A DNA stretch of 63,973 nt, the filler included, from Octopus bimaculoides (Eukaryota): assembly GCF_001194135.2 (NCBI RefSeq). It is 5 parts of 5 records of this genome, joined end to end, with 100 filler letters (N's around TTAATTAATTAA, not from the genome) between each part and the next. Parts side by side here need not be neighbours in the genome. Positions count along the whole stretch, not along the records: positions 38,324 to 63,973 come from NC_069009.1; 4 more parts are not named here. The stretch is one strand, 5' to 3'. Each line of letters begins with the position of its first letter. Position 1 is the stretch's first letter. Positions 56,620 through 63,973 of this stretch are shown here, in pieces. The position numbers and the translations under genes are program-made. Below the pieces are notes generated by a model. That model ran no database searches. It was given only the letters and a program-made list of their open reading frames with translations, and had not been told where the DNA came from.

Positions 56620-57436
56620 CTTTATGGGTAATAAAACTAGAGGTCAGTTAGTGATGAGGGACATCTCTGAGAGCTGTGTATTACTTCATTTTGTTTGTGT
56701 TTAACGTGTTTCACCGAAAGGTTAGTTAATTAAAAATTGTTGCCTGCTTGCGGGATTTGTTATTGCCTTCTTGCAGGATTTGTTATTTGTTTTGTGGTTT
56801 CCCGTAAAGGAAACGTTGTTAAAATATTTTTTGTAAAATAATATCGTGAACTATTATCTTCCCCGAAGGCGGAAGGTTATATAAGATTTTTTATTGCGTT
56901 ACGGGGATTTTGTTAAATATAATTTGAACTGTGTTCCATTTCGGAACAATTGTTAAAAATATTCTTTCTGTGTTTTTTTAATATTGTTTTGTGTTTAAAA
57001 AAATACTGAATAATGTCTTCAAGTGAAGGAAAAAAAATGAATTTTGTCGCCGCTGTTGGTGGTTCTGAAATGATAACATTTCCAGACCTATTTTGGTATG
57101 ATAAGTGAGGAAAATGATGAGAGCAAAATAACTCCACCTAACAAACTAATAAATAAGACAACAGAAAAAAGCCATCATCTATAAATCTTATGATTTAGAA
57201 AAGAAGAAATTCTAACAACTAGAAGAGAGCACCGTTGAAAAGTGCTCGGGTCGGTAATAAAACGAATAAAATAGCCGACCTCACCGCCAACTTTCTCAAC
57301 AGGATCGCCATTATGCTCACCATCATCGTAATCTACTTTCATCTCTTCCGCTATCTCATTGTTTAACCATAATATTTAATATTCTGCCACAAATTTGTTC
57401 CATAAATGTTCTTCTTAACTCAATATTATATTGCAG

Positions 57437-57508
57437 GAATTTGGTATCTAACAACATCAAAGAAATAAAATCAGGAACTTTCCAAAATCTTTCCAATTTA
57501 ACATCTCT
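57437..57508 (+). CDS. LRR exon A (72 nt, phase 2/2): (L)NLVSNNIKEIKSGTFQNLSNLTS(L)
   Basis: ttgcAG acceptor and GTAAGT donor. Exactly 72 nt, in frame with the signal/LRRNT exon, and a typical 24-aa extracellular LRR. Confidence 0.92.
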
Positions 57509-58750
57509 GTAAGTTGAATCAATCTTCTTTTATATTATTTCGTTGAAGATATCTTTCTGAATCAGTAATGTTTTCCCATACTTCTATTTAAGCTGCATTC
57601 CCGTCTGTATATAGATGCGATTTATTTTTTCTTAAATGTTTGTGAATGTGAGCCTGGGTCCATTTTTGAGATAGGGCAAATATGGGAGGGTGATAACTGG
57701 GGAAATATCGATTGCATACACGTGTTACAGTTTATGGACGAGTGTATGCGAGTATATTAACATGTCTGTATAATATGTACGACACTAAATAACTTCCTTC
57801 AAGGACCCTTCTAGTTGTGTATTTAGCGCCAGATATTTCATACGCTAATTGTTAAACATATCTTTTACTTGTTGCTCTTCTTCCTCGTCTCCTTCTTCTT
57901 CCTTTCCCATTAACCCTAACTCCTCTACCAAACCATCATCATTACTCTGATCTTCATTAAGGTCATCGTTATCGTCACCATTCTCCTCATTTACTTCCAA
58001 TTTTTCTTTTAAATTTTCTTCCATCGCAATCTCTTCTTCTTCTTCTTCTTCTTCTTCTTCTTCTTCTTCTTCTTCTTCTTCTTCTTCTTCTTCCACCTCT
58101 TCTTCTTCTTCTTCTTCTTCTTCTTCTTCTTCTTCTTCTTCTTCTTCTTCTTCTTCCACCTCTTCTTCTTCTTCTTCTTCTTCTTCTTCTTCTTCTTCTT
58201 CTTCTTCTGCTTCTTCTTCTTCTTCTTCTTCTTCTTCTTCTTCTTCTTCTTCTTCTTCTTCTTTATTTGTTGCAATTCTTCCTTCTCTTCTTCATAATAT
58301 TTTTCAGTTTTCATTCTTCATATCCTGTTTATGTAATTGTTGTTTGTTGTTTTCCTTGTTGATATTGTCGTCGTCGTCGTCATCATCATCATCATCATCA
58401 TTTTGTTCCACATTCTTATCCTTATGTTTCTTCTCCTCTTCCTTCTTTTTATCATTGTTCTTGGTCCTCTTCTTTTACTTGTTTTTGTACTTTTCCTCCT
58501 TCGTTTCTTGTACGTCTTACGTATTATCATCTACTTTTACTTCACATCCTTTATTTATTCTCCGTCATCTTCATGTACTTCGTCTTCGTCTTCATTGCTT
58601 CTTCTTTTTCTTCTTCTTTTTCTTCTTCTTCTTCCTCCACCTCTTCTTCTTCTTCTTCTTCTTCTTCTTCTTCTTCTTTTCTTCTTCTTCGTCTTCATTT
58701 CTTCTTCTTCTTCTTCATATTGTTGTTGTTTTCTTGCTGTTCCTTTCTTT

Positions 58751-58795
<45 letters not shown>

Positions 58796-59277
58796 TATCA
58801 CTTTCTTCTGCTTTTGGATCTATTTCTGCTTCTTAACGTACTTCTCCATTTCATTGTAATTCTTCTTTTCCTCCTTCTTTTCTTCTAATTCGTCTTGCTC
58901 GTATTCTCATTCTTCTTGTGTCTCTTCTCCAACATCTTCTTATTCGTCTTCTTCTTCTTTTACTCCTTCTTCTTCTTCACATAATCGTCATCACAACAAA
59001 AGCTGCAAATCCGCATCGTTATCAAACTAAGTTAAATTAACATCATATCCCTATCATCAGCATCATATAACTTCGTTATCAAGACTCTCACAATATTTTT
59101 GTATCCTCTGCATCCTCATTACATTCATCACTCCACCCCACCAATCATTATCAACAAGACCGTCATGATGTTCATCATGATCATAATCTACATTTCATCT
59201 TTTCCATCATTCGATATAAAATAACCTCTCGCAAATTTGTTCCAAAATGTTCTTCTTGACTCAATTTTATGTTCCAG

Positions 59278-59349
59278 GATTTGGGGATTGAACGATATCA
59301 AAGAAATCAAAGCAGAAACCTTCCAAAATCTTTCCAGTTTAAAATTTCT
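59278..59349 (+). CDS. LRR exon B (72 nt): (L)IWGLNDIKEIKAETFQNLSSLKF(L)
   Basis: ttccAG acceptor and GTAAGT donor, 72 nt, paralogous to exon A. Has W at the normally conserved second L. Confidence 0.85.
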
Positions 59350-60224
59350 GTAAGTTGAATCAATCTCCTCTTACACTATTTCATTGAAGATATTTTTCTA
59401 AATCTGTAAGGTTTCAATTTAATGTCTACACCCGTCTTTCTATAGAGGTATTTCATTGTTATTGAACGTTTGTGAATGTGAGTATGGGCGCATTTTTGAG
59501 ATAGGGGGTATAGGAGCGTGATTATTGAGGAGAAACATTTATTGCATGCACGTGTTTCCGTTTATGGAAGAGTGAATGCAAGTGTATTAACATGTGTGTA
59601 TAATATGTACGGCATTTACCTTTAGATCGAAGCTAAATAAGTTCCTTGAATAAATATTCTTGCTGTGCATTTAGCACCAGATATTTCAAAACGCTAATTG
59701 TTAAACATATCTCCTACTTGCTGCTGTTGTCTTCTTCTTCGTTTCCTTTCAACTTTAACTCCTCCTCCGCGCCGTCATCATTAATGTGTGCAGAATATGT
59801 ACGGTCTTTACCTTTAGATCGACGCTGAATAACTTCTGTGAATAGCACTTCTAGTTGTGTATTTAGCACAAGATATTTCATACCCTAATTGTTGAACATT
59901 TTTCCTTGTTGTTATTCTTGTTCTTCTTCGTTTTCTTCCTCGTCTCCTTCTTCTTCCTTTCCCATTAACTTTAACTCGTCTACCAAACCATCATCATTTC
60001 TTCGTTCTTCATTTAGGTCATCGTTATCGTCACCATTCTCGTCATACTTCTTCCGCTTTTTCTTTAAAATTTTCTTCCATCACAATCTCCCCCTCCTCCT
60101 CCTCTTCTTCTTCTTCTTCTTCTTCTTCTTCTTCTTCTTCTTCTTCTTCTTCTTCTCGTTCTTCATCTTCTTCTTCTTTTTCTTCTTCTTTTTCTTCTTC
60201 TTCTTTTTCTTCTTCTTCTTCTTT

Positions 60225-60267
<43 letters not shown>

Positions 60268-60328
60268 CCTTCGTCTATTTTCATGTCTTCTACGTCGTCT
60301 TCACATTCTTCTTCTTTTTCTTCTTCTT

Positions 60329-60375
<47 letters not shown>

Positions 60376-60685
60376 TCTTCACTTGTTCATCATCACAACA
60401 AACCTGCGAGTCCACATCGTGTTCACAGTAATCAAAATTAACATCATCTTCGTATCACCTACCTTTATCAAGATTCTCACAATATTCCCATTTCCTCTGT
60501 CTCGTCTTTATATTCATCTCAGACTTCCATCACACCGTTTACATTATCAACAAGTTCGTCATGATGTTCATCAGCATCGTAATCTATTTTTCATCTCTTT
60601 CTTTATCTCATTCTTTAGCCATAATATTTATTATTCTGTCACAAATTTGTTCCATAAATGTTCTTGACTGAATTTTATTTTCCAG

Positions 60686-60757
60686 GTATTTGGGTTTTAA
60701 TCATATCAAAGAGATCAAAGTAGAAACATTCCAAAATCTTTCCAATTTAAGAATTCT
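60686..60757 (+). CDS. LRR exon C (72 nt): (L)YLGFNHIKEIKVETFQNLSNLRI(L)
   Basis: ttccAG acceptor, GTAAGT donor, 72 nt, canonical LRR. Confidence 0.92.
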
Positions 60758-61211
60758 GTAAGTTGAATCAATCTTCTTTCATAATGTTTCATTGACGATA
60801 TCTATGTAAATGTGTACGTGTTTTCCCATACATGAATTTAATGTCCACTCCCACCTCTCTATAGATGCATTTTATAGTTTTTGAATGTTTATGAATGTGA
60901 GGCTGGGCCCATTTTTGATAAAGGGGATATATGGGAGCGTGGTTATTGAGGGGAGACATCTATTGCATACACGTGTCTTCGTTTATGGACAAGTGTATGC
61001 AAATGTATTATTATCATATGTGTATAACATGTACGGCATTTACCTTTAGATCGACACTAAATAACTTCCTCGAATAACCGTTCTAATTGTGTATTTAACA
61101 CCAGCTATTTCATATGCTAATTCTTAAACAAATCTTTTACTTGCTGTTTCCTTTCCCTTCAACCATCATCACAACTTAGATCTTAATTTAGCTCATCTAG
61201 TAACATCAACA

Positions 61212-61538
61212 CCAACAAGTAGGAGATATGTTTAACAATTAGCGCATGAAATATCTGGTGCTAAATGCACAGCAAGAAGATTTATTCAAGGAAGTTATCT
61301 AGCTTCGATCTAAAGATAAATGCCGTACATATTATGCACACATGTTAATACACTTGCATTCACTCTTCCATAAACGGAGACATGTGCATGCAATAGATGT
61401 TTCCCCTCAATGATCACGCTCCTATATAACCCTTATCTCAAAAATGCGTTTTATTCGTTTTATTACCGGCTCCAGACACTTTTCAACGGTGCTCTATTCT
61501 AGGTATTATAATCTCTTCTTTTCTAAAACATAAGCTTT
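61212..61538 (-). repeat. Inverted, exon-less copy of cassette intron sequence
   Basis: 61215-61448 is the reverse complement of 59489-59722 (roughly 90% by eye) and, less closely, of 60908-61143. 61449-61538 is the reverse complement of 57183-57271. Confidence 0.9.
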
Positions 61539-61776
61539 ACATTTTCTTGTAAACTTTTTCTAGCACATTCTTCTTCTTCTTCTTCTTCTTCTTCTTCTTC
61601 TTCTTCTTCTTCTTCTTCTTCTTCTTCTTCTTCTTCTTCTTCTTCTTCTTCTTCTTCTTCTTCTTCTTCTTCTTCTTCTTCTTCTTCTTCTTCTTCTTCT
61701 TCTTCTTCTTTCTCCTACTCCTATTCTTCTTCTCCTTGTTATTGTTGTTGTTGTTGTTGTTATTATTATTATTGTT

Positions 61777-62126
61777 CAGTAGTTTTATTTTTATAACGTG
61801 CTTTCACTTCACTACCGAGCGCAGCTCTGTGCGCCTTGGGTATGTGCTGTGGTTTGCTGTGGTGCTCTAATGGTTACTGTATTGAAAGTGTTTTGCGTAG
61901 TATGTGTGCAGTGCCCAGTAGTGCAATTTTCTGTATGTTATATATATTTGTAAGTCCTGGTGTTTTTGTTATGTATTTGTCTGAATATTGTTTTATTATA
62001 CCTAAGGCATCTACTATGATACGAATTGTTTCTGTTTTTAGATTCCACATTCGAGTTACCTCTATTTCGAGGTCTTTGTATTTTGAAAGTTTTTCCGTTT
62101 CTTTTAGAGAAACGTTGTCATCTGCT
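61777..62126 (-). mobile_element. Young R4/Dong-like LINE 3' end in the intron between LRR exons C and D
   Basis: KETEKLSKYKDLEIEVTRMWNLK...ALGII...QKIALLGTAHILRKTLSIQ*. About 5 differences in about 230 nt from the 49821 copy. (TTA)n on both sides of element+gap. Confidence 0.88.
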
Positions 62127-62580
62127 NNNNNNNNNNNNNNNNNNNNNNNNNNNNNNNNNNNNNNNNNNNNNNNNNNNNNNNNNNNNNNNNNNNNNNNNNN
62201 NNNNNNNNNNNNNNNNNNNNNNNNNNNNNNNNNNNNNNNNNNNNNNNNNNNNNNNNNNNNNNNNNNNNNNNNNNNNNNNNNNNNNNNNNNNNNNNNNNNN
62301 NNNNNNNNNNNNNNNNNNNNNNNNNNNNNNNNNNNNNNNNNNNNNNNNNNNNNNNNNNNNNNNNNNNNNNNNNNNNNNNNNNNNNNNNNNNNNNNNNNNN
62401 NNNNNNNNNNNNNNNNNNNNNNNNNNNNNNNNNNNNNNNNNNNNNNNNNNNNNNNNNNNNNNNNNNNNNNNNNNNNNNNNNNNNNNNNNNNNNNNNNNNN
62501 NNNNNNNNNNNNNNNNNNNNNNNNNNNNNNNNNNNNNNNNNNNNNNNNNNNNNNNNNNNNNNNNNNNNNNNNNNNNNNNN

Positions 62581-62644
<64 letters not shown>

Positions 62645-62822
62645 TATTAATAATAATAATAAGCTTCATATTCTTCCTATTCTTTCCCTTTCTTCATGTT
62701 TTTTGGAATTCTTCTGCCACTTCTACTTTCTCTACTTTTTCTCTTCTTCTACTCCATCTTCTACTCCTTCGCCTCCATTACTCCTCCACCTACTTCTCCT
62801 CCTCTTCCTGCTGCTGCTGCTG

Positions 62823-62868
<46 letters not shown>

Positions 62869-63387
62869 CTTGTCTCTTCTCATTCTTTTTCTTCCGCTTC
62901 TTTACCTCCTTGTCCTTGTCTCGTCCTTTTCTATTAATTCTTCCTCTCCTTCTTCTTCTTCTTCTGCTTTTTGTTCTCCATCTTTTTCTCAATTCTGTCC
63001 TTCACCACCATCTGCTTGTTTTTCGTGATGTTTTTGTTGTTGTTGTTCTTCTTCTTCTTCTTCTTCTTCTTCTTCTTCTTCTTCTTCTTCTTCTTCTTCT
63101 TCTTCTTCTTCTTCTTCTTCTTCTTCTTCTTCTTCTTCTTCTTTCTTCACTATCTTCCCAATCTCCTCTTCATTTTTTGTCCTTTTCTTCTTCTTCACCA
63201 TTTTCATCACTACCATCACCATCAACTCTACCGCCATTATTATTTCCCCTTCCTATTCTTCCTCCTCCTCCTTCTGCTTTTGTTCTTTCTCATCATTATC
63301 ATCAACAGCATCATCATCGTCATCACCTTTGTATTATTCATCTCATGTTATACACAATCTCTTATTAACTCAATTTTATGTTCCCAG

Positions 63388-63459
63388 AGATTTGAGAGAT
63401 AATGACATCAATGAAATCAAAGCAGACACTTTTCGAAATCTGTCCAGTTTAGAATATCT
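63388..63459 (+). CDS. LRR exon D (72 nt): (L)DLRDNDINEIKADTFRNLSSLEY(L); gene continues beyond the window
   Basis: tcccAG acceptor, GTAAGT donor, 72 nt, canonical LRR. No stop codon is reached within the window. Confidence 0.92.
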
Positions 63460-63973
63460 GTAAGTTTAATCGGTTTTCCTTTTTTAGTATTTCATAGAAG
63501 ATATATTTCTAAATCTGTAATATCTTCCAATATATCACTTTAATCTCATTTACTCGTTTTTCAAAGGTGTGTTTATTGCTTACGAAACCGTGTGTATGCC
63601 CGTTTCTAAGGTATGGAATATATGAGAGCAAGATACTTCGGGGAAAATATTTTGCGCACGTATCCCTATGCGTAAAATCTCTCTGCGCGATGGGAGTGTT
63701 AATGTATTGTAATGTCTGTGAATGTGTGTGAGAACTAATTCCACACAATTGTTATATAAGTGTGTGTACCAATTAAAACTGTCACTTAGTCAAATGTCTG
63801 TCATTTTGTGTATGGACGTGTGCATGAGAATATATCAACATGTATGTGTAATTCGTTCCCTATACGATATACGGTGATTACGTTTGCATGACCACTGATT
63901 ATCGTCCTAGAGGTCTCTTCTTGTACTACTTGTTGTTATCGTTGTTGTTTTTGTTTCTTCTTCTTCTTCTTCT

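What the first reader, a model, noticed from the sequence alone, without database searches (positions are those of the whole stretch)
57437..63459. Hypervariability confined to the concave ligand-binding face of the LRRs (VLR-like signature)
Seen: aligning the four units, the six x positions of LxxLxLxxNxI vary strongly. They read T/K/R/E, S/F/I/Y, N/I/Y/D, V/G/G/R, S/L/F/D and N/D/H/D, so four of the six differ in all four copies. The convex segment IKEIKxxTFQNLSxL is nearly invariant. Established: these x positions form the concave beta-sheet binding surface and are the diversified sites in lamprey VLRs and plant NLR/RLK LRRs. Inference: diversifying selection on binding specificity among recent duplicates, suggesting a variable recognition receptor family in a cephalopod.
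Basis: partly seen in the sequence, partly recalled or inferred. Interest (0 to 1): 0.8.

Follow-up and report, generated by a model that had tools for sequence, protein, structure and literature searches.

The report
Octopus LRR receptor with hypervariable binding face
The window holds the start of an octopus receptor gene built from one-repeat-per-exon leucine-rich-repeat cassettes. Across its gene family, an octopus-specific group of LRR-bearing adhesion GPCRs, the ligand-binding face changes faster than neutral expectation.

Summary
Four 72-nt exons (57437-57508, 59278-59349, 60686-60757, 63388-63459, + strand) each encode one 24-residue LRR, with AG/GTAAGT splice sites and matching phase. 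The assembly gap lies inside an intron.

An upstream exon (54178-54359) encodes a signal peptide and LRRNT cap. The window therefore holds the 5' part of one gene, cut off at the piece's end.

Its relatives are Octopus proteins. Full-length members read LRR, LRRCT, Ly6/uPAR-like, SEA-like, HRM, GAIN/GPS, 7TM. This probably corresponds to the octopus-specific adhesion-GPCR expansion of Ritschard 2019.

The cassettes are tandem duplicates of exon plus intron (flanks about 80% identical), but not very recent (dS about 0.4).

In the window, variation concentrates on the six concave positions (permutation p=0.00075). A codon test on the window alone is underpowered (omega 2.3, p=0.15).

With 42 cassettes from five loci and 17 independent pairs:
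- omega concave is 2.5-2.9 (LRT against 1, p about 1e-6 to 1e-7);
- omega convex is 0.8;
- omega scaffold is 0.1;
- synonymous divergence is not raised in concave codons.

Diversifying selection is supported for the family. Nothing points to VLR-type somatic assembly, because the cassettes are ordinary spliceable exons. NCBI isoforms of paralogues differ by single cassettes.

The parts
54178..54359 (+). First coding exon: signal peptide plus LRRNT cysteine cap (MFHQFKLTFVLVFYMSFCLESQAVSVICRICECRNSQTNIVCLSRGLTSVPQPIPSNVEY). It ends in TT, which completes a Leu codon with the first base of the next exon. A possible acceptor AG at 54158-54159 suggests an upstream 5'UTR exon.
   Evidence: tblastn with P0001 gives 72% identity over 61 aa, E=3e-26. 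Sequence and GTAAGT donor read. Homologous to the N-termini of full-length LRR-aGPCRs P0170 and P0171 (E about 7e-14). Pfam LRRNT is only weak on the window protein itself (E=0.3). AF2 predicts helix 2-22 followed by a capped LRR.
57437..57508 (+). LRR cassette exon 1 (72 nt, phase 1-1): NLVSNNIKEIKSGTFQNLSNLTS
59278..59349 (+). LRR cassette exon 2 (72 nt, phase 1-1): IWGLNDIKEIKAETFQNLSSLKF. It has Trp at the core Leu position and an apparent -1/+1 compensated frameshift in its first 13 nt.
60686..60757 (+). LRR cassette exon 3 (72 nt, phase 1-1): YLGFNHIKEIKVETFQNLSNLRI
63388..63459 (+). LRR cassette exon 4 (72 nt, phase 1-1): DLRDNDINEIKADTFRNLSSLEY. This is a more divergent cassette type, closest to O. 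bimaculoides L002:18478. The gene continues past the end of the piece.
57282..57825 (+). Duplicated unit 1: cassette 1 with its homologous intron flanks
   Evidence: blastn: 77.7% identity to unit 3 over 569 nt. Alignment.
58985..59676 (+). Duplicated unit 2: cassette 2 with its homologous intron flanks
   Evidence: blastn: 75.9% identity to unit 3 over 730 nt
60386..61100 (+). Duplicated unit 3: cassette 3 with its homologous intron flanks (the reference unit)
63362..63547 (+). Duplicated unit 4: shorter and more diverged flank homology
   Evidence: blastn: 74.5% identity over 188 nt
62127..62580 (.). Assembly gap, inside the intron between cassettes 3 and 4. It does not touch coding sequence.
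57509..63387 (+). Introns of the LRR array: 69% pyrimidine on the sense strand, with long (CTT)n arrays in the sense orientation only

Best explanation
The region is the 5' part of one protein-coding gene on the + strand. It has a signal-peptide/LRRNT exon (54178-54359) followed by at least four LRR cassette exons, and the piece's end cuts it off.

Shown:
- Each 24-residue LRR has its own 72-nt exon in the same phase (1-1). Cassettes can therefore be added, lost or skipped without breaking the frame.
- The cassettes arose by duplication of exon plus flanking intron.
- The gene belongs to an Octopus family. Its complete members read SP, LRRNT, LRR(n), LRRCT, Ly6/uPAR-like, SEA-like, HRM, GAIN/GPS, 7TM, sometimes with a Death domain. 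That makes them LRR-bearing adhesion GPCRs.
- Across the family the six solvent-exposed positions of LxxLxLxxNxI evolve 2.5 to 3 times faster than synonymous sites. The hydrophobic/Asn scaffold is strongly conserved, and the convex side drifts near-neutrally.

Inferred:
- The concave beta-sheet is the ligand-binding surface.
- Duplication and unequal crossing-over between the homologous, microsatellite-rich introns supply new cassettes.
- Positive selection then diversifies their binding residues, giving paralogues and repeats different specificities.
- Binding is transduced through the GAIN/7TM module.
- In-frame cassette skipping or swapping, seen in NCBI isoform models of paralogues, may add further variety.

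Not decided by the data: whether the ligands are microbial, environmental (sucker or skin chemotactile) or cell-surface (neuronal adhesion).
For: Gene model:
- Splice sites, phase and intact ORFs of all four cassettes.
- Exon 1 found by tblastn and read directly.
- Pfam LRR_8 E=1e-24.
- The AF2 model has pLDDT 85 with beta-strands every 24 residues at x2-L4-x3. Its nearest solved folds are Slit2 D2, VLRs, TLR3, LRRTM2 and NgR.

Duplication:
- Flanks of units 1-3 are 76-84% identical over 370-730 nt.

Family:
- The closest proteins are all from Octopus.
- P0170, P0185 and P0188 carry GPS plus 7tm_2, with HRM and GAIN in P0188 and Death in P0185.
- The window's exon-1 peptide aligns to the N-terminus of P0170 and P0171.
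- P0173 has the same cassette type as the window, followed by LRRCT, Ly6-like, SEA-like and HRM.
- Ritschard 2019 (PMC6408891) describes an octopus-specific adhesion-GPCR group. [quoted passage not shown]
- Collinear non-coding similarity (82-86%) around exon 1 and in intron 1 to O. sinensis L001 suggests that gene is the counterpart of the window gene.

Selection, on 17 independent cassette pairs chosen on intron similarity only:
- Concave dN 0.58, dS 0.33, flank distance 0.22, convex dN 0.21, scaffold dN 0.025. The bootstrap ratio dN(concave)/dS is 1.78 (1.17-2.62).
- ML codon model: omega concave 2.5-2.9, convex 0.82, scaffold 0.10. The LRT against omega=1 gives 2dlnL 22-27.
- The result is robust to leaving out any locus, with p no larger than 2e-4.
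- Exact site-label permutation gives p=0.0005.
- Synonymous divergence in concave codons (0.246) is not raised compared with convex (0.278) and scaffold (0.264) codons.

Isoforms:
- O. sinensis isoforms differ by whole 24-aa cassettes.
Against: - The window ends after cassette 4. LRRCT, GAIN and 7TM are therefore not seen for this gene. Its closest longer relative, P0034, ends after the SEA-like module without a 7TM, so an LRR-only secreted product is possible.
- Selection is not significant for the window alone (p=0.15), nor within locus L003 (omega 1.46). In L003, block-duplicated cassettes keep their concave residues.
- The sample is 42 cassettes from five loci, analysed as pairs with no recombination-aware tree.
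- Ligand binding, expression and signalling are inferred, not observed.
- The isoforms are computational NCBI models. Reads can mis-map among near-identical exons.
Confidence: 0.72

Rival explanations
1. This is ordinary LRR background. The x positions vary simply because they are unconstrained and solvent-exposed, with no positive selection.
For: - The window alone cannot reject omega=1 (p=0.15).
- Locus L003 alone gives omega 1.46, not significant.
- Over the whole family the convex x positions are also quite variable (2.19 against 2.73 bits).
Against: - Relaxation cannot push dN above the neutral rate. Yet concave dN (0.58) exceeds dS (0.33) and the intron distance (0.22).
- The LRT rejects omega=1 with p about 1e-6 to 1e-7, and does so in every leave-one-locus-out set.
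- Concave positions exceed the other x positions with p=0.0005.
Confidence: 0.13
2. The pattern comes from mosaic history or local hypermutation. Short gene-conversion tracts or a mutational hotspot at the exon ends would make the concave-coding segments look more diverged than the rest.
For: - Cassettes with near-identical introns and convex parts differ sharply in the first 22 nt. L001 17471 against 34899 has flanks 92% identical but concave pN of 0.40.
- Cassettes of one type are dispersed among other types, which points to shuffling or conversion.
Against: - An older history or a higher mutation rate would also raise synonymous divergence in the same codons and in the interleaved scaffold codons. 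It does not: pS is 0.246 in concave codons, against 0.278 (convex) and 0.264 (scaffold).
- The variable codons alternate with conserved L, N and I codons within a few bases.
Confidence: 0.07
3. This is a VLR-type system. The cassettes would be donor modules copied somatically into an incomplete receptor gene.
For: - The fold and the placement of variability match VLRs.
- There are arrays of similar LRR cassettes.
Against: - Every cassette has a canonical acceptor and GTAAGT donor and a matching phase. It sits in order behind a signal-peptide/LRRNT exon, so ordinary splicing yields an intact protein.
- NCBI transcript models of paralogues splice exactly these exons.
- No non-coding intervening block replaces the LRR region.
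Confidence: 0.02
4. This is a decaying, non-functional exon array: pseudo-exons left by duplication.
For: - Unit 2 carries an apparent compensated frameshift and Trp at a core Leu position.
- The gene is truncated by the piece's end, and no identical protein was found in the database.
Against: - All four exons keep open frames, exact 72-nt length and consensus splice sites.
- Scaffold codons are under strong purifying selection (omega about 0.1).
- The O. sinensis counterpart has annotated spliced products.
Confidence: 0.05

Closest known systems
Octopus-specific adhesion-GPCR expansion ('group 3' of Ritschard et al. 2019, PMC6408891; NCBI names 'adhesion GPCR G6-like' and 'GPR126-like')
   Same: - The window's exon-1 peptide and cassette type match the N-terminal parts of proteins that continue into HRM, GAIN/GPS and 7tm_2.
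[quoted passage not shown] P0185 has both.
   Different: - The 7TM part of the window gene is not in the piece.
- The paper worked from the 7TM signature. It found positive selection only on branches and no positively selected sites.
- It did not describe the exon-per-LRR structure or the bias towards the concave face.
Lamprey and hagfish variable lymphocyte receptors (VLRs)
   Same: - LRRNT-capped 24-residue 'typical' LRR solenoid. VLR structures are among the best Foldseek matches (TM 0.74-0.77).
- Variability is concentrated at the same x positions of LxxLxLxxN (textbook knowledge; also stated in PMC3341825).
   Different: - VLR diversity is made somatically, by copying cassettes without splice sites into an incomplete germline gene.
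- Here the cassettes are in-phase germline exons and the diversity is between paralogues and repeats.
- No stalk or GPI region is visible.
Ectocarpus LRR-ROCO and LRR-kinase genes (Zambounis et al. 2012, PMC3341825)
   Same: - One repeat per exon.
- 72-nt, 24-residue LRR exons are described for the Ectocarpus LRR-kinase type II set.
- Exons of equal length and compatible phase.
- Exon duplication and shuffling.
- Diversifying selection mapped to the concave face.
   Different: - They are cytoplasmic ROCO GTPases and kinases of a brown alga, not secreted or membrane animal receptors.
- The origin is independent.
Slit and LGR4-6 / glycoprotein-hormone receptor genes
   Same: - Slit2 D2 is the top structural match, and LGR4 is also matched.
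- From my own knowledge, these genes also encode single LRRs in about 72-nt exons of constant phase.
   Different: - From my own knowledge, those LRR domains are conserved orthologues with fixed repeat numbers.
- No cassette turnover or omega>1 at the concave face is known for them. I did not test this here.
Vertebrate ADGRG6 (GPR126) and ADGRA2/3 (GPR124/125)
   Same: - Adhesion GPCRs with SEA/HormR/GAIN/7TM (ADGRG6) or with N-terminal LRRs (ADGRA). This is from my own knowledge.
- NCBI names the octopus proteins after ADGRG6.
   Different: - The octopus proteins combine an LRRNT-LRR-LRRCT head and Ly6/uPAR-like modules with the SEA-like/HRM/GAIN/7TM body.
- They form a large lineage-specific family.
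- Orthology to either vertebrate group is not shown.
Plant NLR and receptor-like protein LRR domains
   Same: Diversifying selection on the solvent-exposed xxLxLxx residues after tandem duplication (established; cited in PMC3341825).
   Different: - A different LRR subtype and different gene architecture.
- Intracellular NLRs, or single-exon LRR blocks.

Membership tests
Extracellular 'typical' LRR domain with LRRNT cap | Tandem 24-residue repeats matching LxxLxLxxNxIxxIxxxxFxxLxx | tested here: met
   Four repeats read directly. Pfam LRR_8 E=1.4e-24 and LRR_1 E=1.3e-8.
Extracellular 'typical' LRR domain with LRRNT cap | Signal peptide followed by a Cys-rich LRRNT cap | tested here: inconclusive
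   - There is a hydrophobic N-terminus and a CxxCxC...C pattern in exon 1.
- AF2 gives helix 2-22, then two short strands before LRR1.
- Pfam LRRNT reaches only E=0.3 on the window protein, against E=1.2e-5 in the homologue P0034.
- No signal-peptide predictor was available.
Extracellular 'typical' LRR domain with LRRNT cap | Curved solenoid with a parallel beta-sheet on the concave side formed by the xLxLx segments | tested here: met
   AF2 pLDDT is 85, with strands at 60-62, 84-86, 108-110 and 132-134. Foldseek matches Slit2 D2, VLRs and NgR with TM 0.69-0.77.
Octopus LRR-adhesion GPCR family (group 3 of Ritschard 2019) | N-terminal exon homologous to that of family members | tested here: met
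   - 72-74% identity to P0001 and P0160.
- 56% identity to P0034.
- 47% identity (E=7e-14) to the full-length aGPCRs P0170 and P0171.
Octopus LRR-adhesion GPCR family (group 3 of Ritschard 2019) | LRR cassettes as 72-nt phase-1 exons with the family's conserved intron flanks | tested here: met
   The same acceptor and donor context and homologous flanks are found in L001, L002 and L003.
Octopus LRR-adhesion GPCR family (group 3 of Ritschard 2019) | LRRCT, Ly6/uPAR-like, SEA-like and HRM modules downstream of the LRRs | not testable with these tools
   The piece ends 514 nt after cassette 4. These modules are present in relatives P0173, P0093, P0097 and P0185.
Octopus LRR-adhesion GPCR family (group 3 of Ritschard 2019) | GAIN/GPS autoproteolysis domain and secretin-type 7TM (PF01825, PF00002) | not testable with these tools
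   These lie outside the piece. They are present in P0170, P0185 and P0188 and absent from the closest longer relative P0034.
Variable lymphocyte receptor (VLR) system | Incomplete germline gene whose LRR region is replaced by non-coding sequence | tested here: not met
   Exon 1 is followed by ordered LRR exons that splice in frame.
Variable lymphocyte receptor (VLR) system | Donor cassettes without splice signals, copied in somatically | tested here: not met
   All cassettes here and in four related loci carry AG...GTAAGT. Somatic DNA could not be examined.
Variable lymphocyte receptor (VLR) system | Hypervariability at the concave x positions | tested here: met
LRR receptors under diversifying selection (a functional class, not a clade) | dN/dS above 1 at the solvent-exposed concave positions and below 1 at scaffold positions | tested here: met
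   For the family, omega is 2.5-2.9 at concave positions against 0.10 at scaffold positions, with p about 1e-6 to 1e-7. For the window alone omega is 2.3 with p=0.15, which is inconclusive.

The most novel reading that the evidence does not exclude
Octopods may possess a large, germline-encoded repertoire of LRR-adhesion GPCRs whose binding domains are built from freely exchangeable 72-nt cassette exons. Three layers would diversify them: cassette duplication and shuffling, positive selection on the concave face, and combinatorial or mutually exclusive splicing of cassettes. The strictly sense-oriented CU-rich intronic repeats might regulate that splicing. Individual cells could then display different receptor variants, a splicing-based counterpart of VLR or Dscam diversity. 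It might serve immune recognition, chemotactile recognition or neuronal self-recognition.
Probability: 0.2. Interest if true: 0.85.

Novelty: new variant of a known kind. Interest (0 to 1): 0.55.

Why it matters
Cephalopods are large, behaviourally complex animals. No diversified recognition receptor is described for them in the literature I could search. A 2026 review of immune diversification across animals discusses cephalopods only for haematopoiesis and haemocytes.

The octopus adhesion-GPCR expansion was known, but only from its 7TM part. No positively selected sites had been found in it.

This analysis locates the fast-evolving part of what appears to be that expansion. It is the concave face of an exon-modular LRR head. 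That gives a concrete target for finding ligands. It also gives a concrete test of whether cassette splicing creates receptor diversity in suckers, skin, nerve cord or haemocytes.

The one-repeat-per-exon, concave-selection design described in brown-algal candidate receptors also occurs in an animal membrane-receptor family.

Tried and rejected
- A six-frame regular-expression scan for the LRR motif found only low-complexity noise, because the motif spans exon junctions. I replaced it with a splice-aware 72-nt exon scan.
- No further cassette lies in the piece outside the four, on either strand.
- There is no evidence for a cassette hidden in the gap.
- The first word-indexed protein searches returned only 3-4 hits. 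The exhaustive search was dominated by giant LRR proteins, and only P0034, P0093 and P0097 were informative.
- The look-up of encoding contigs had no record for P0093, P0162 or P0176, and the range for P0170 was too long.
- Megablast of the piece against L003 found nothing, so the window is not that locus.
- No database protein is identical to the window's exon 1, so the species is not identified.
- Rfam gave no match in the piece.
- ORFs upstream of the gene gave only a weak reverse-transcriptase fragment.
- The window-only codon test is underpowered.
- Somatic VLR-type assembly, pseudo-exon decay and conversion or hypermutation were considered and judged unlikely, for the reasons given under the rivals.
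- Literature searches found no description of this LRR feature in cephalopods.

Full report
**1. What is in the sequence**

On the + strand there are four 72-nt exons, at 57437-57508, 59278-59349, 60686-60757 and 63388-63459. Each follows a pyrimidine tract plus AG and is followed by GTAAGT.

Each exon begins with the third base of a split Leu codon and ends with CT. All are therefore phase 1-1 and each encodes exactly one 24-residue LRR:
- NLVSNNIKEIKSGTFQNLSNLTS
- IWGLNDIKEIKAETFQNLSSLKF
- YLGFNHIKEIKVETFQNLSNLRI
- DLRDNDINEIKADTFRNLSSLEY

Among the 16 non-scaffold positions, only 6 of 8008 possible sets of six carry as many distinct residues as the concave set (p=0.00075).

The assembly gap (62127-62580) lies in the intron between cassettes 3 and 4, and no frame crosses it. 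Because the cassettes are symmetrical, the frame is kept whatever the gap hides. I found no cassette flank next to the gap. Its left edge is a dispersed repeat that also borders another gap.

**2. It is one gene, and this is its 5' end**

tblastn with the best protein hit found an upstream exon at 54178-54359. It encodes a hydrophobic leader and a Cys-rich LRRNT-like cap, and ends in TT|GTAAGT in the same phase.

The spliced 157-residue product scores LRR_8 at E=1e-24. Its AlphaFold model has pLDDT 85, with a short beta-strand every 24 residues at x2-L4-x3.

Its nearest solved folds are Slit2 D2, lamprey and hagfish VLRs, TLR3, LRRTM2, NGL-3 and NgR.

The piece ends 514 nt after cassette 4, so the rest of the gene is unseen.

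**3. The units are duplicates of exon plus intron**

- Units 1-3 share 76-84% identity over 370-730 nt, including about 100 nt upstream and about 350 nt downstream of the exon. Unit 4 is more diverged.
- The duplications are not very recent. Flank divergence is about 0.2 and synonymous divergence about 0.4.
- Window cassettes are as close to some O. sinensis cassettes (flank identity 0.80-0.83) as they are to each other.

**4. What family it belongs to**

All close relatives are Octopus proteins. The O. sinensis contig L001 is collinear with the window in the promoter, exon 1 and intron 1 (82-86% identity). It probably carries the counterpart gene. Its cassette array differs in number, order and spacing, which points to cassette turnover.

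Longer relatives show the full architecture:
- signal peptide and LRRNT;
- 5 to more than 15 LRRs;
- LRRCT;
- one to three Ly6/uPAR-like Cys modules;
- an SEA-like module;
- HRM;
- GAIN/GPS;
- secretin-type 7TM, once with a C-terminal Death domain.

The window's exon-1 peptide aligns to the N-terminus of the full-length receptors P0170 and P0171 (E=7e-14). P0173 has the window's cassette type followed by LRRCT, Ly6-like, SEA-like and HRM modules.

This matches the octopus-specific adhesion-GPCR 'group 3' of Ritschard et al. 2019. [quoted passage not shown] The paper found omega>1 only on branches and no selected sites.

Membership of the window gene is supported for the N-terminal features. 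It cannot be tested for the 7TM part.

**5. Is the concave face really hypervariable beyond neutral expectation?**

I harvested 42 cassettes with a splice-aware scan: 4 from the window, 5 from O. sinensis L001, 8 from O. bimaculoides L002, 20 from O. bimaculoides L003 and 5 from O. sinensis L004. I then formed 17 non-overlapping pairs using intron-flank similarity only.

| Measure (Nei-Gojobori, 17 pairs) | Value |
|---|---|
| Flank distance | 0.22 |
| dS, all codons | 0.33 |
| dN, six concave x codons | 0.58 |
| dN, ten convex x codons | 0.21 |
| dN, seven scaffold codons | 0.025 |

The bootstrap ratio dN(concave)/dS is 1.78 (95% CI 1.17-2.62).

I also fitted a pairwise maximum-likelihood MG94 model with fixed site classes, shared kappa and pair-specific distances.

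| Site class | Omega |
|---|---|
| Concave | 2.5-2.9 |
| Convex | 0.82 |
| Scaffold | 0.10 |

- Omega(concave)=1 is rejected (2dlnL 22-27, p about 1e-6 to 1e-7).
- Omega(concave)=omega(convex) is rejected (p about 1e-11).
- The result survives removal of any one locus (p no larger than 2e-4).
- It also survives an exact permutation of site labels (4 of 8008).

Synonymous divergence in the concave codons (0.246) is not raised. This argues against an older mosaic history or a mutational hotspot.

Limits:
- The window alone gives omega 2.3 with p=0.15.
- Locus L003 alone gives omega 1.46, not significant. There, block-duplicated cassettes keep their concave residues.
- Over the whole family the convex positions are far from invariant (2.19 against 2.73 bits).
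- The analysis uses pairs, not a recombination-aware tree.

**6. Mechanism proposed**

Shown:
- the modular exon structure;
- duplication of exon plus intron;
- family membership of the N-terminal part;
- omega>1 at concave sites in the family.

Inferred:
- Unequal crossing-over between the homologous, microsatellite-rich introns creates and removes cassettes.
- Selection diversifies the binding surface.
- The signal passes through the GAIN/7TM module.

A further layer is possible. NCBI isoform models of O. sinensis paralogues differ by omission or exchange of single 24-aa cassettes (157 against 133 aa; 525, 501 and 477 aa). The phase-symmetric exons allow exactly this. These are computational models, and reads may mis-map among similar exons.

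In all five loci the introns of the LRR array are pyrimidine-rich on the sense strand (57-69%, against about 51% elsewhere). They carry (CTT)n arrays in the sense orientation only. This could be inherited with the duplicated unit, or it could be a splicing-regulatory feature. I did not test this.

**7. Comparison with known systems**

- The fold and the placement of variability are VLR-like. The defining VLR features are not met, because there is no incomplete germline gene and no splice-less donor cassettes.
- The closest analogue in design is the Ectocarpus LRR-ROCO/LRR-kinase system. It has one repeat per exon, exon shuffling and concave-face diversifying selection (PMC3341825).
- The closest relatives by descent are the octopus adhesion GPCRs (PMC6408891).
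- I found no paper describing the exon-modular, concave-selected LRR head of these receptors.

**8. Verdict**

- Diversifying selection and a variable receptor family hold up at family level.
- 'Recent' and 'VLR-like' need qualification.
- An immune role is open.

I rate it a new variant of a known kind, with moderate interest.

Noticed in passing
window 57509-63387; L001 17543-36017; L002 11912-19789; L003 459-38883; L004 6278-10355: Introns between LRR cassettes are pyrimidine-rich on the sense strand (57-69%, against about 51% in neighbouring introns and flanks). They carry (CTT)n arrays only in the sense orientation (609, 558, 21, 1377 and 402 bases, against 0 for (GAA)n) in all five loci. 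This may be inherited with the duplicated unit, or it may be CU-rich splicing-regulator binding sequence.
   Followed up: partly
window 59278-59299: Cassette 2 reads GATTTGGGGATTGAAC where the others read xGATTTG/xxATTTG...AAC. This looks like a 1-nt loss at the exon start compensated by a 1-nt gain about 12 nt later. It changes four residues at once and puts Trp at the core Leu position.
   Followed up: partly
window 61259-61446 (-) against 60910-61100 (+): Intron 3 holds an inverted copy (82% identity, 191 nt) of the conserved downstream-intron block, about 160 nt from the direct copy. By eye, the next roughly 55 nt resemble the reverse complement of 57225-57275. This could be a rearrangement, a mobile element or an assembly artefact, and it could form a long pre-mRNA hairpin.
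   Followed up: no
window 61803-62025 and 49848-50053; L002 6259-6480: A dispersed repeat, 87-88% identical to an O. bimaculoides copy, sits directly left of two assembly gaps (62127 and 50054). The gaps are therefore probably caused by this repeat.
   Followed up: partly
window 54178-54357 against L001 9296-9475: Exon 1 (leader plus LRRNT) differs from its O. sinensis counterpart with dN 0.16 and dS 0.12 (ratio 1.3). The numbers are small, but the cap region seems fast-evolving too.
   Followed up: partly
P0093, P0154-P0158, P0163 (one O. sinensis gene); P0001-P0003 (L001): Annotated isoforms differ by leaving out or exchanging single 24-aa LRR cassettes near the N-terminus. One cassette (LIVQMNNIATIKEGTFTGLSNLKT) occurs in only two of the isoforms.
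   Followed up: partly
L003 387/2012/4360 against 5541/7126/8201: This is a higher-order duplication of a three-cassette block. Corresponding cassettes keep most concave residues (for example DLSSND in both), unlike single-cassette duplicates elsewhere.
   Followed up: partly
L001 17471, 34899, 36018: Three cassettes of one type (IQAINEKTFQNLSSL) are separated by two cassettes of other types over 17 kb. Two of the three have flanks 92% identical, which points to non-adjacent duplication or conversion.
   Followed up: partly
L002 10001-19865: The O. bimaculoides annotation splits one exon-1-plus-eight-cassette array into two short gene models (86 and 181 aa). The family is likely under-counted and fragmented in current annotations.
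   Followed up: no
P0185 residues 1203-1277; P0164 residues about 313-588: One full-length family member ends in a Death domain behind the 7TM. Another carries three tandem Ly6/uPAR-like modules after the LRRCT.
   Followed up: no
window 52223-52516 (-): A 97-aa ORF with a weak reverse-transcriptase match (RVT_1, E=0.001, below the Pfam cut-off). It is probably a retrotransposon fragment upstream of the gene.
   Followed up: partly
window 53700-53935: A long (TG)n-rich microsatellite block lies about 250 nt upstream of the start codon.
   Followed up: no
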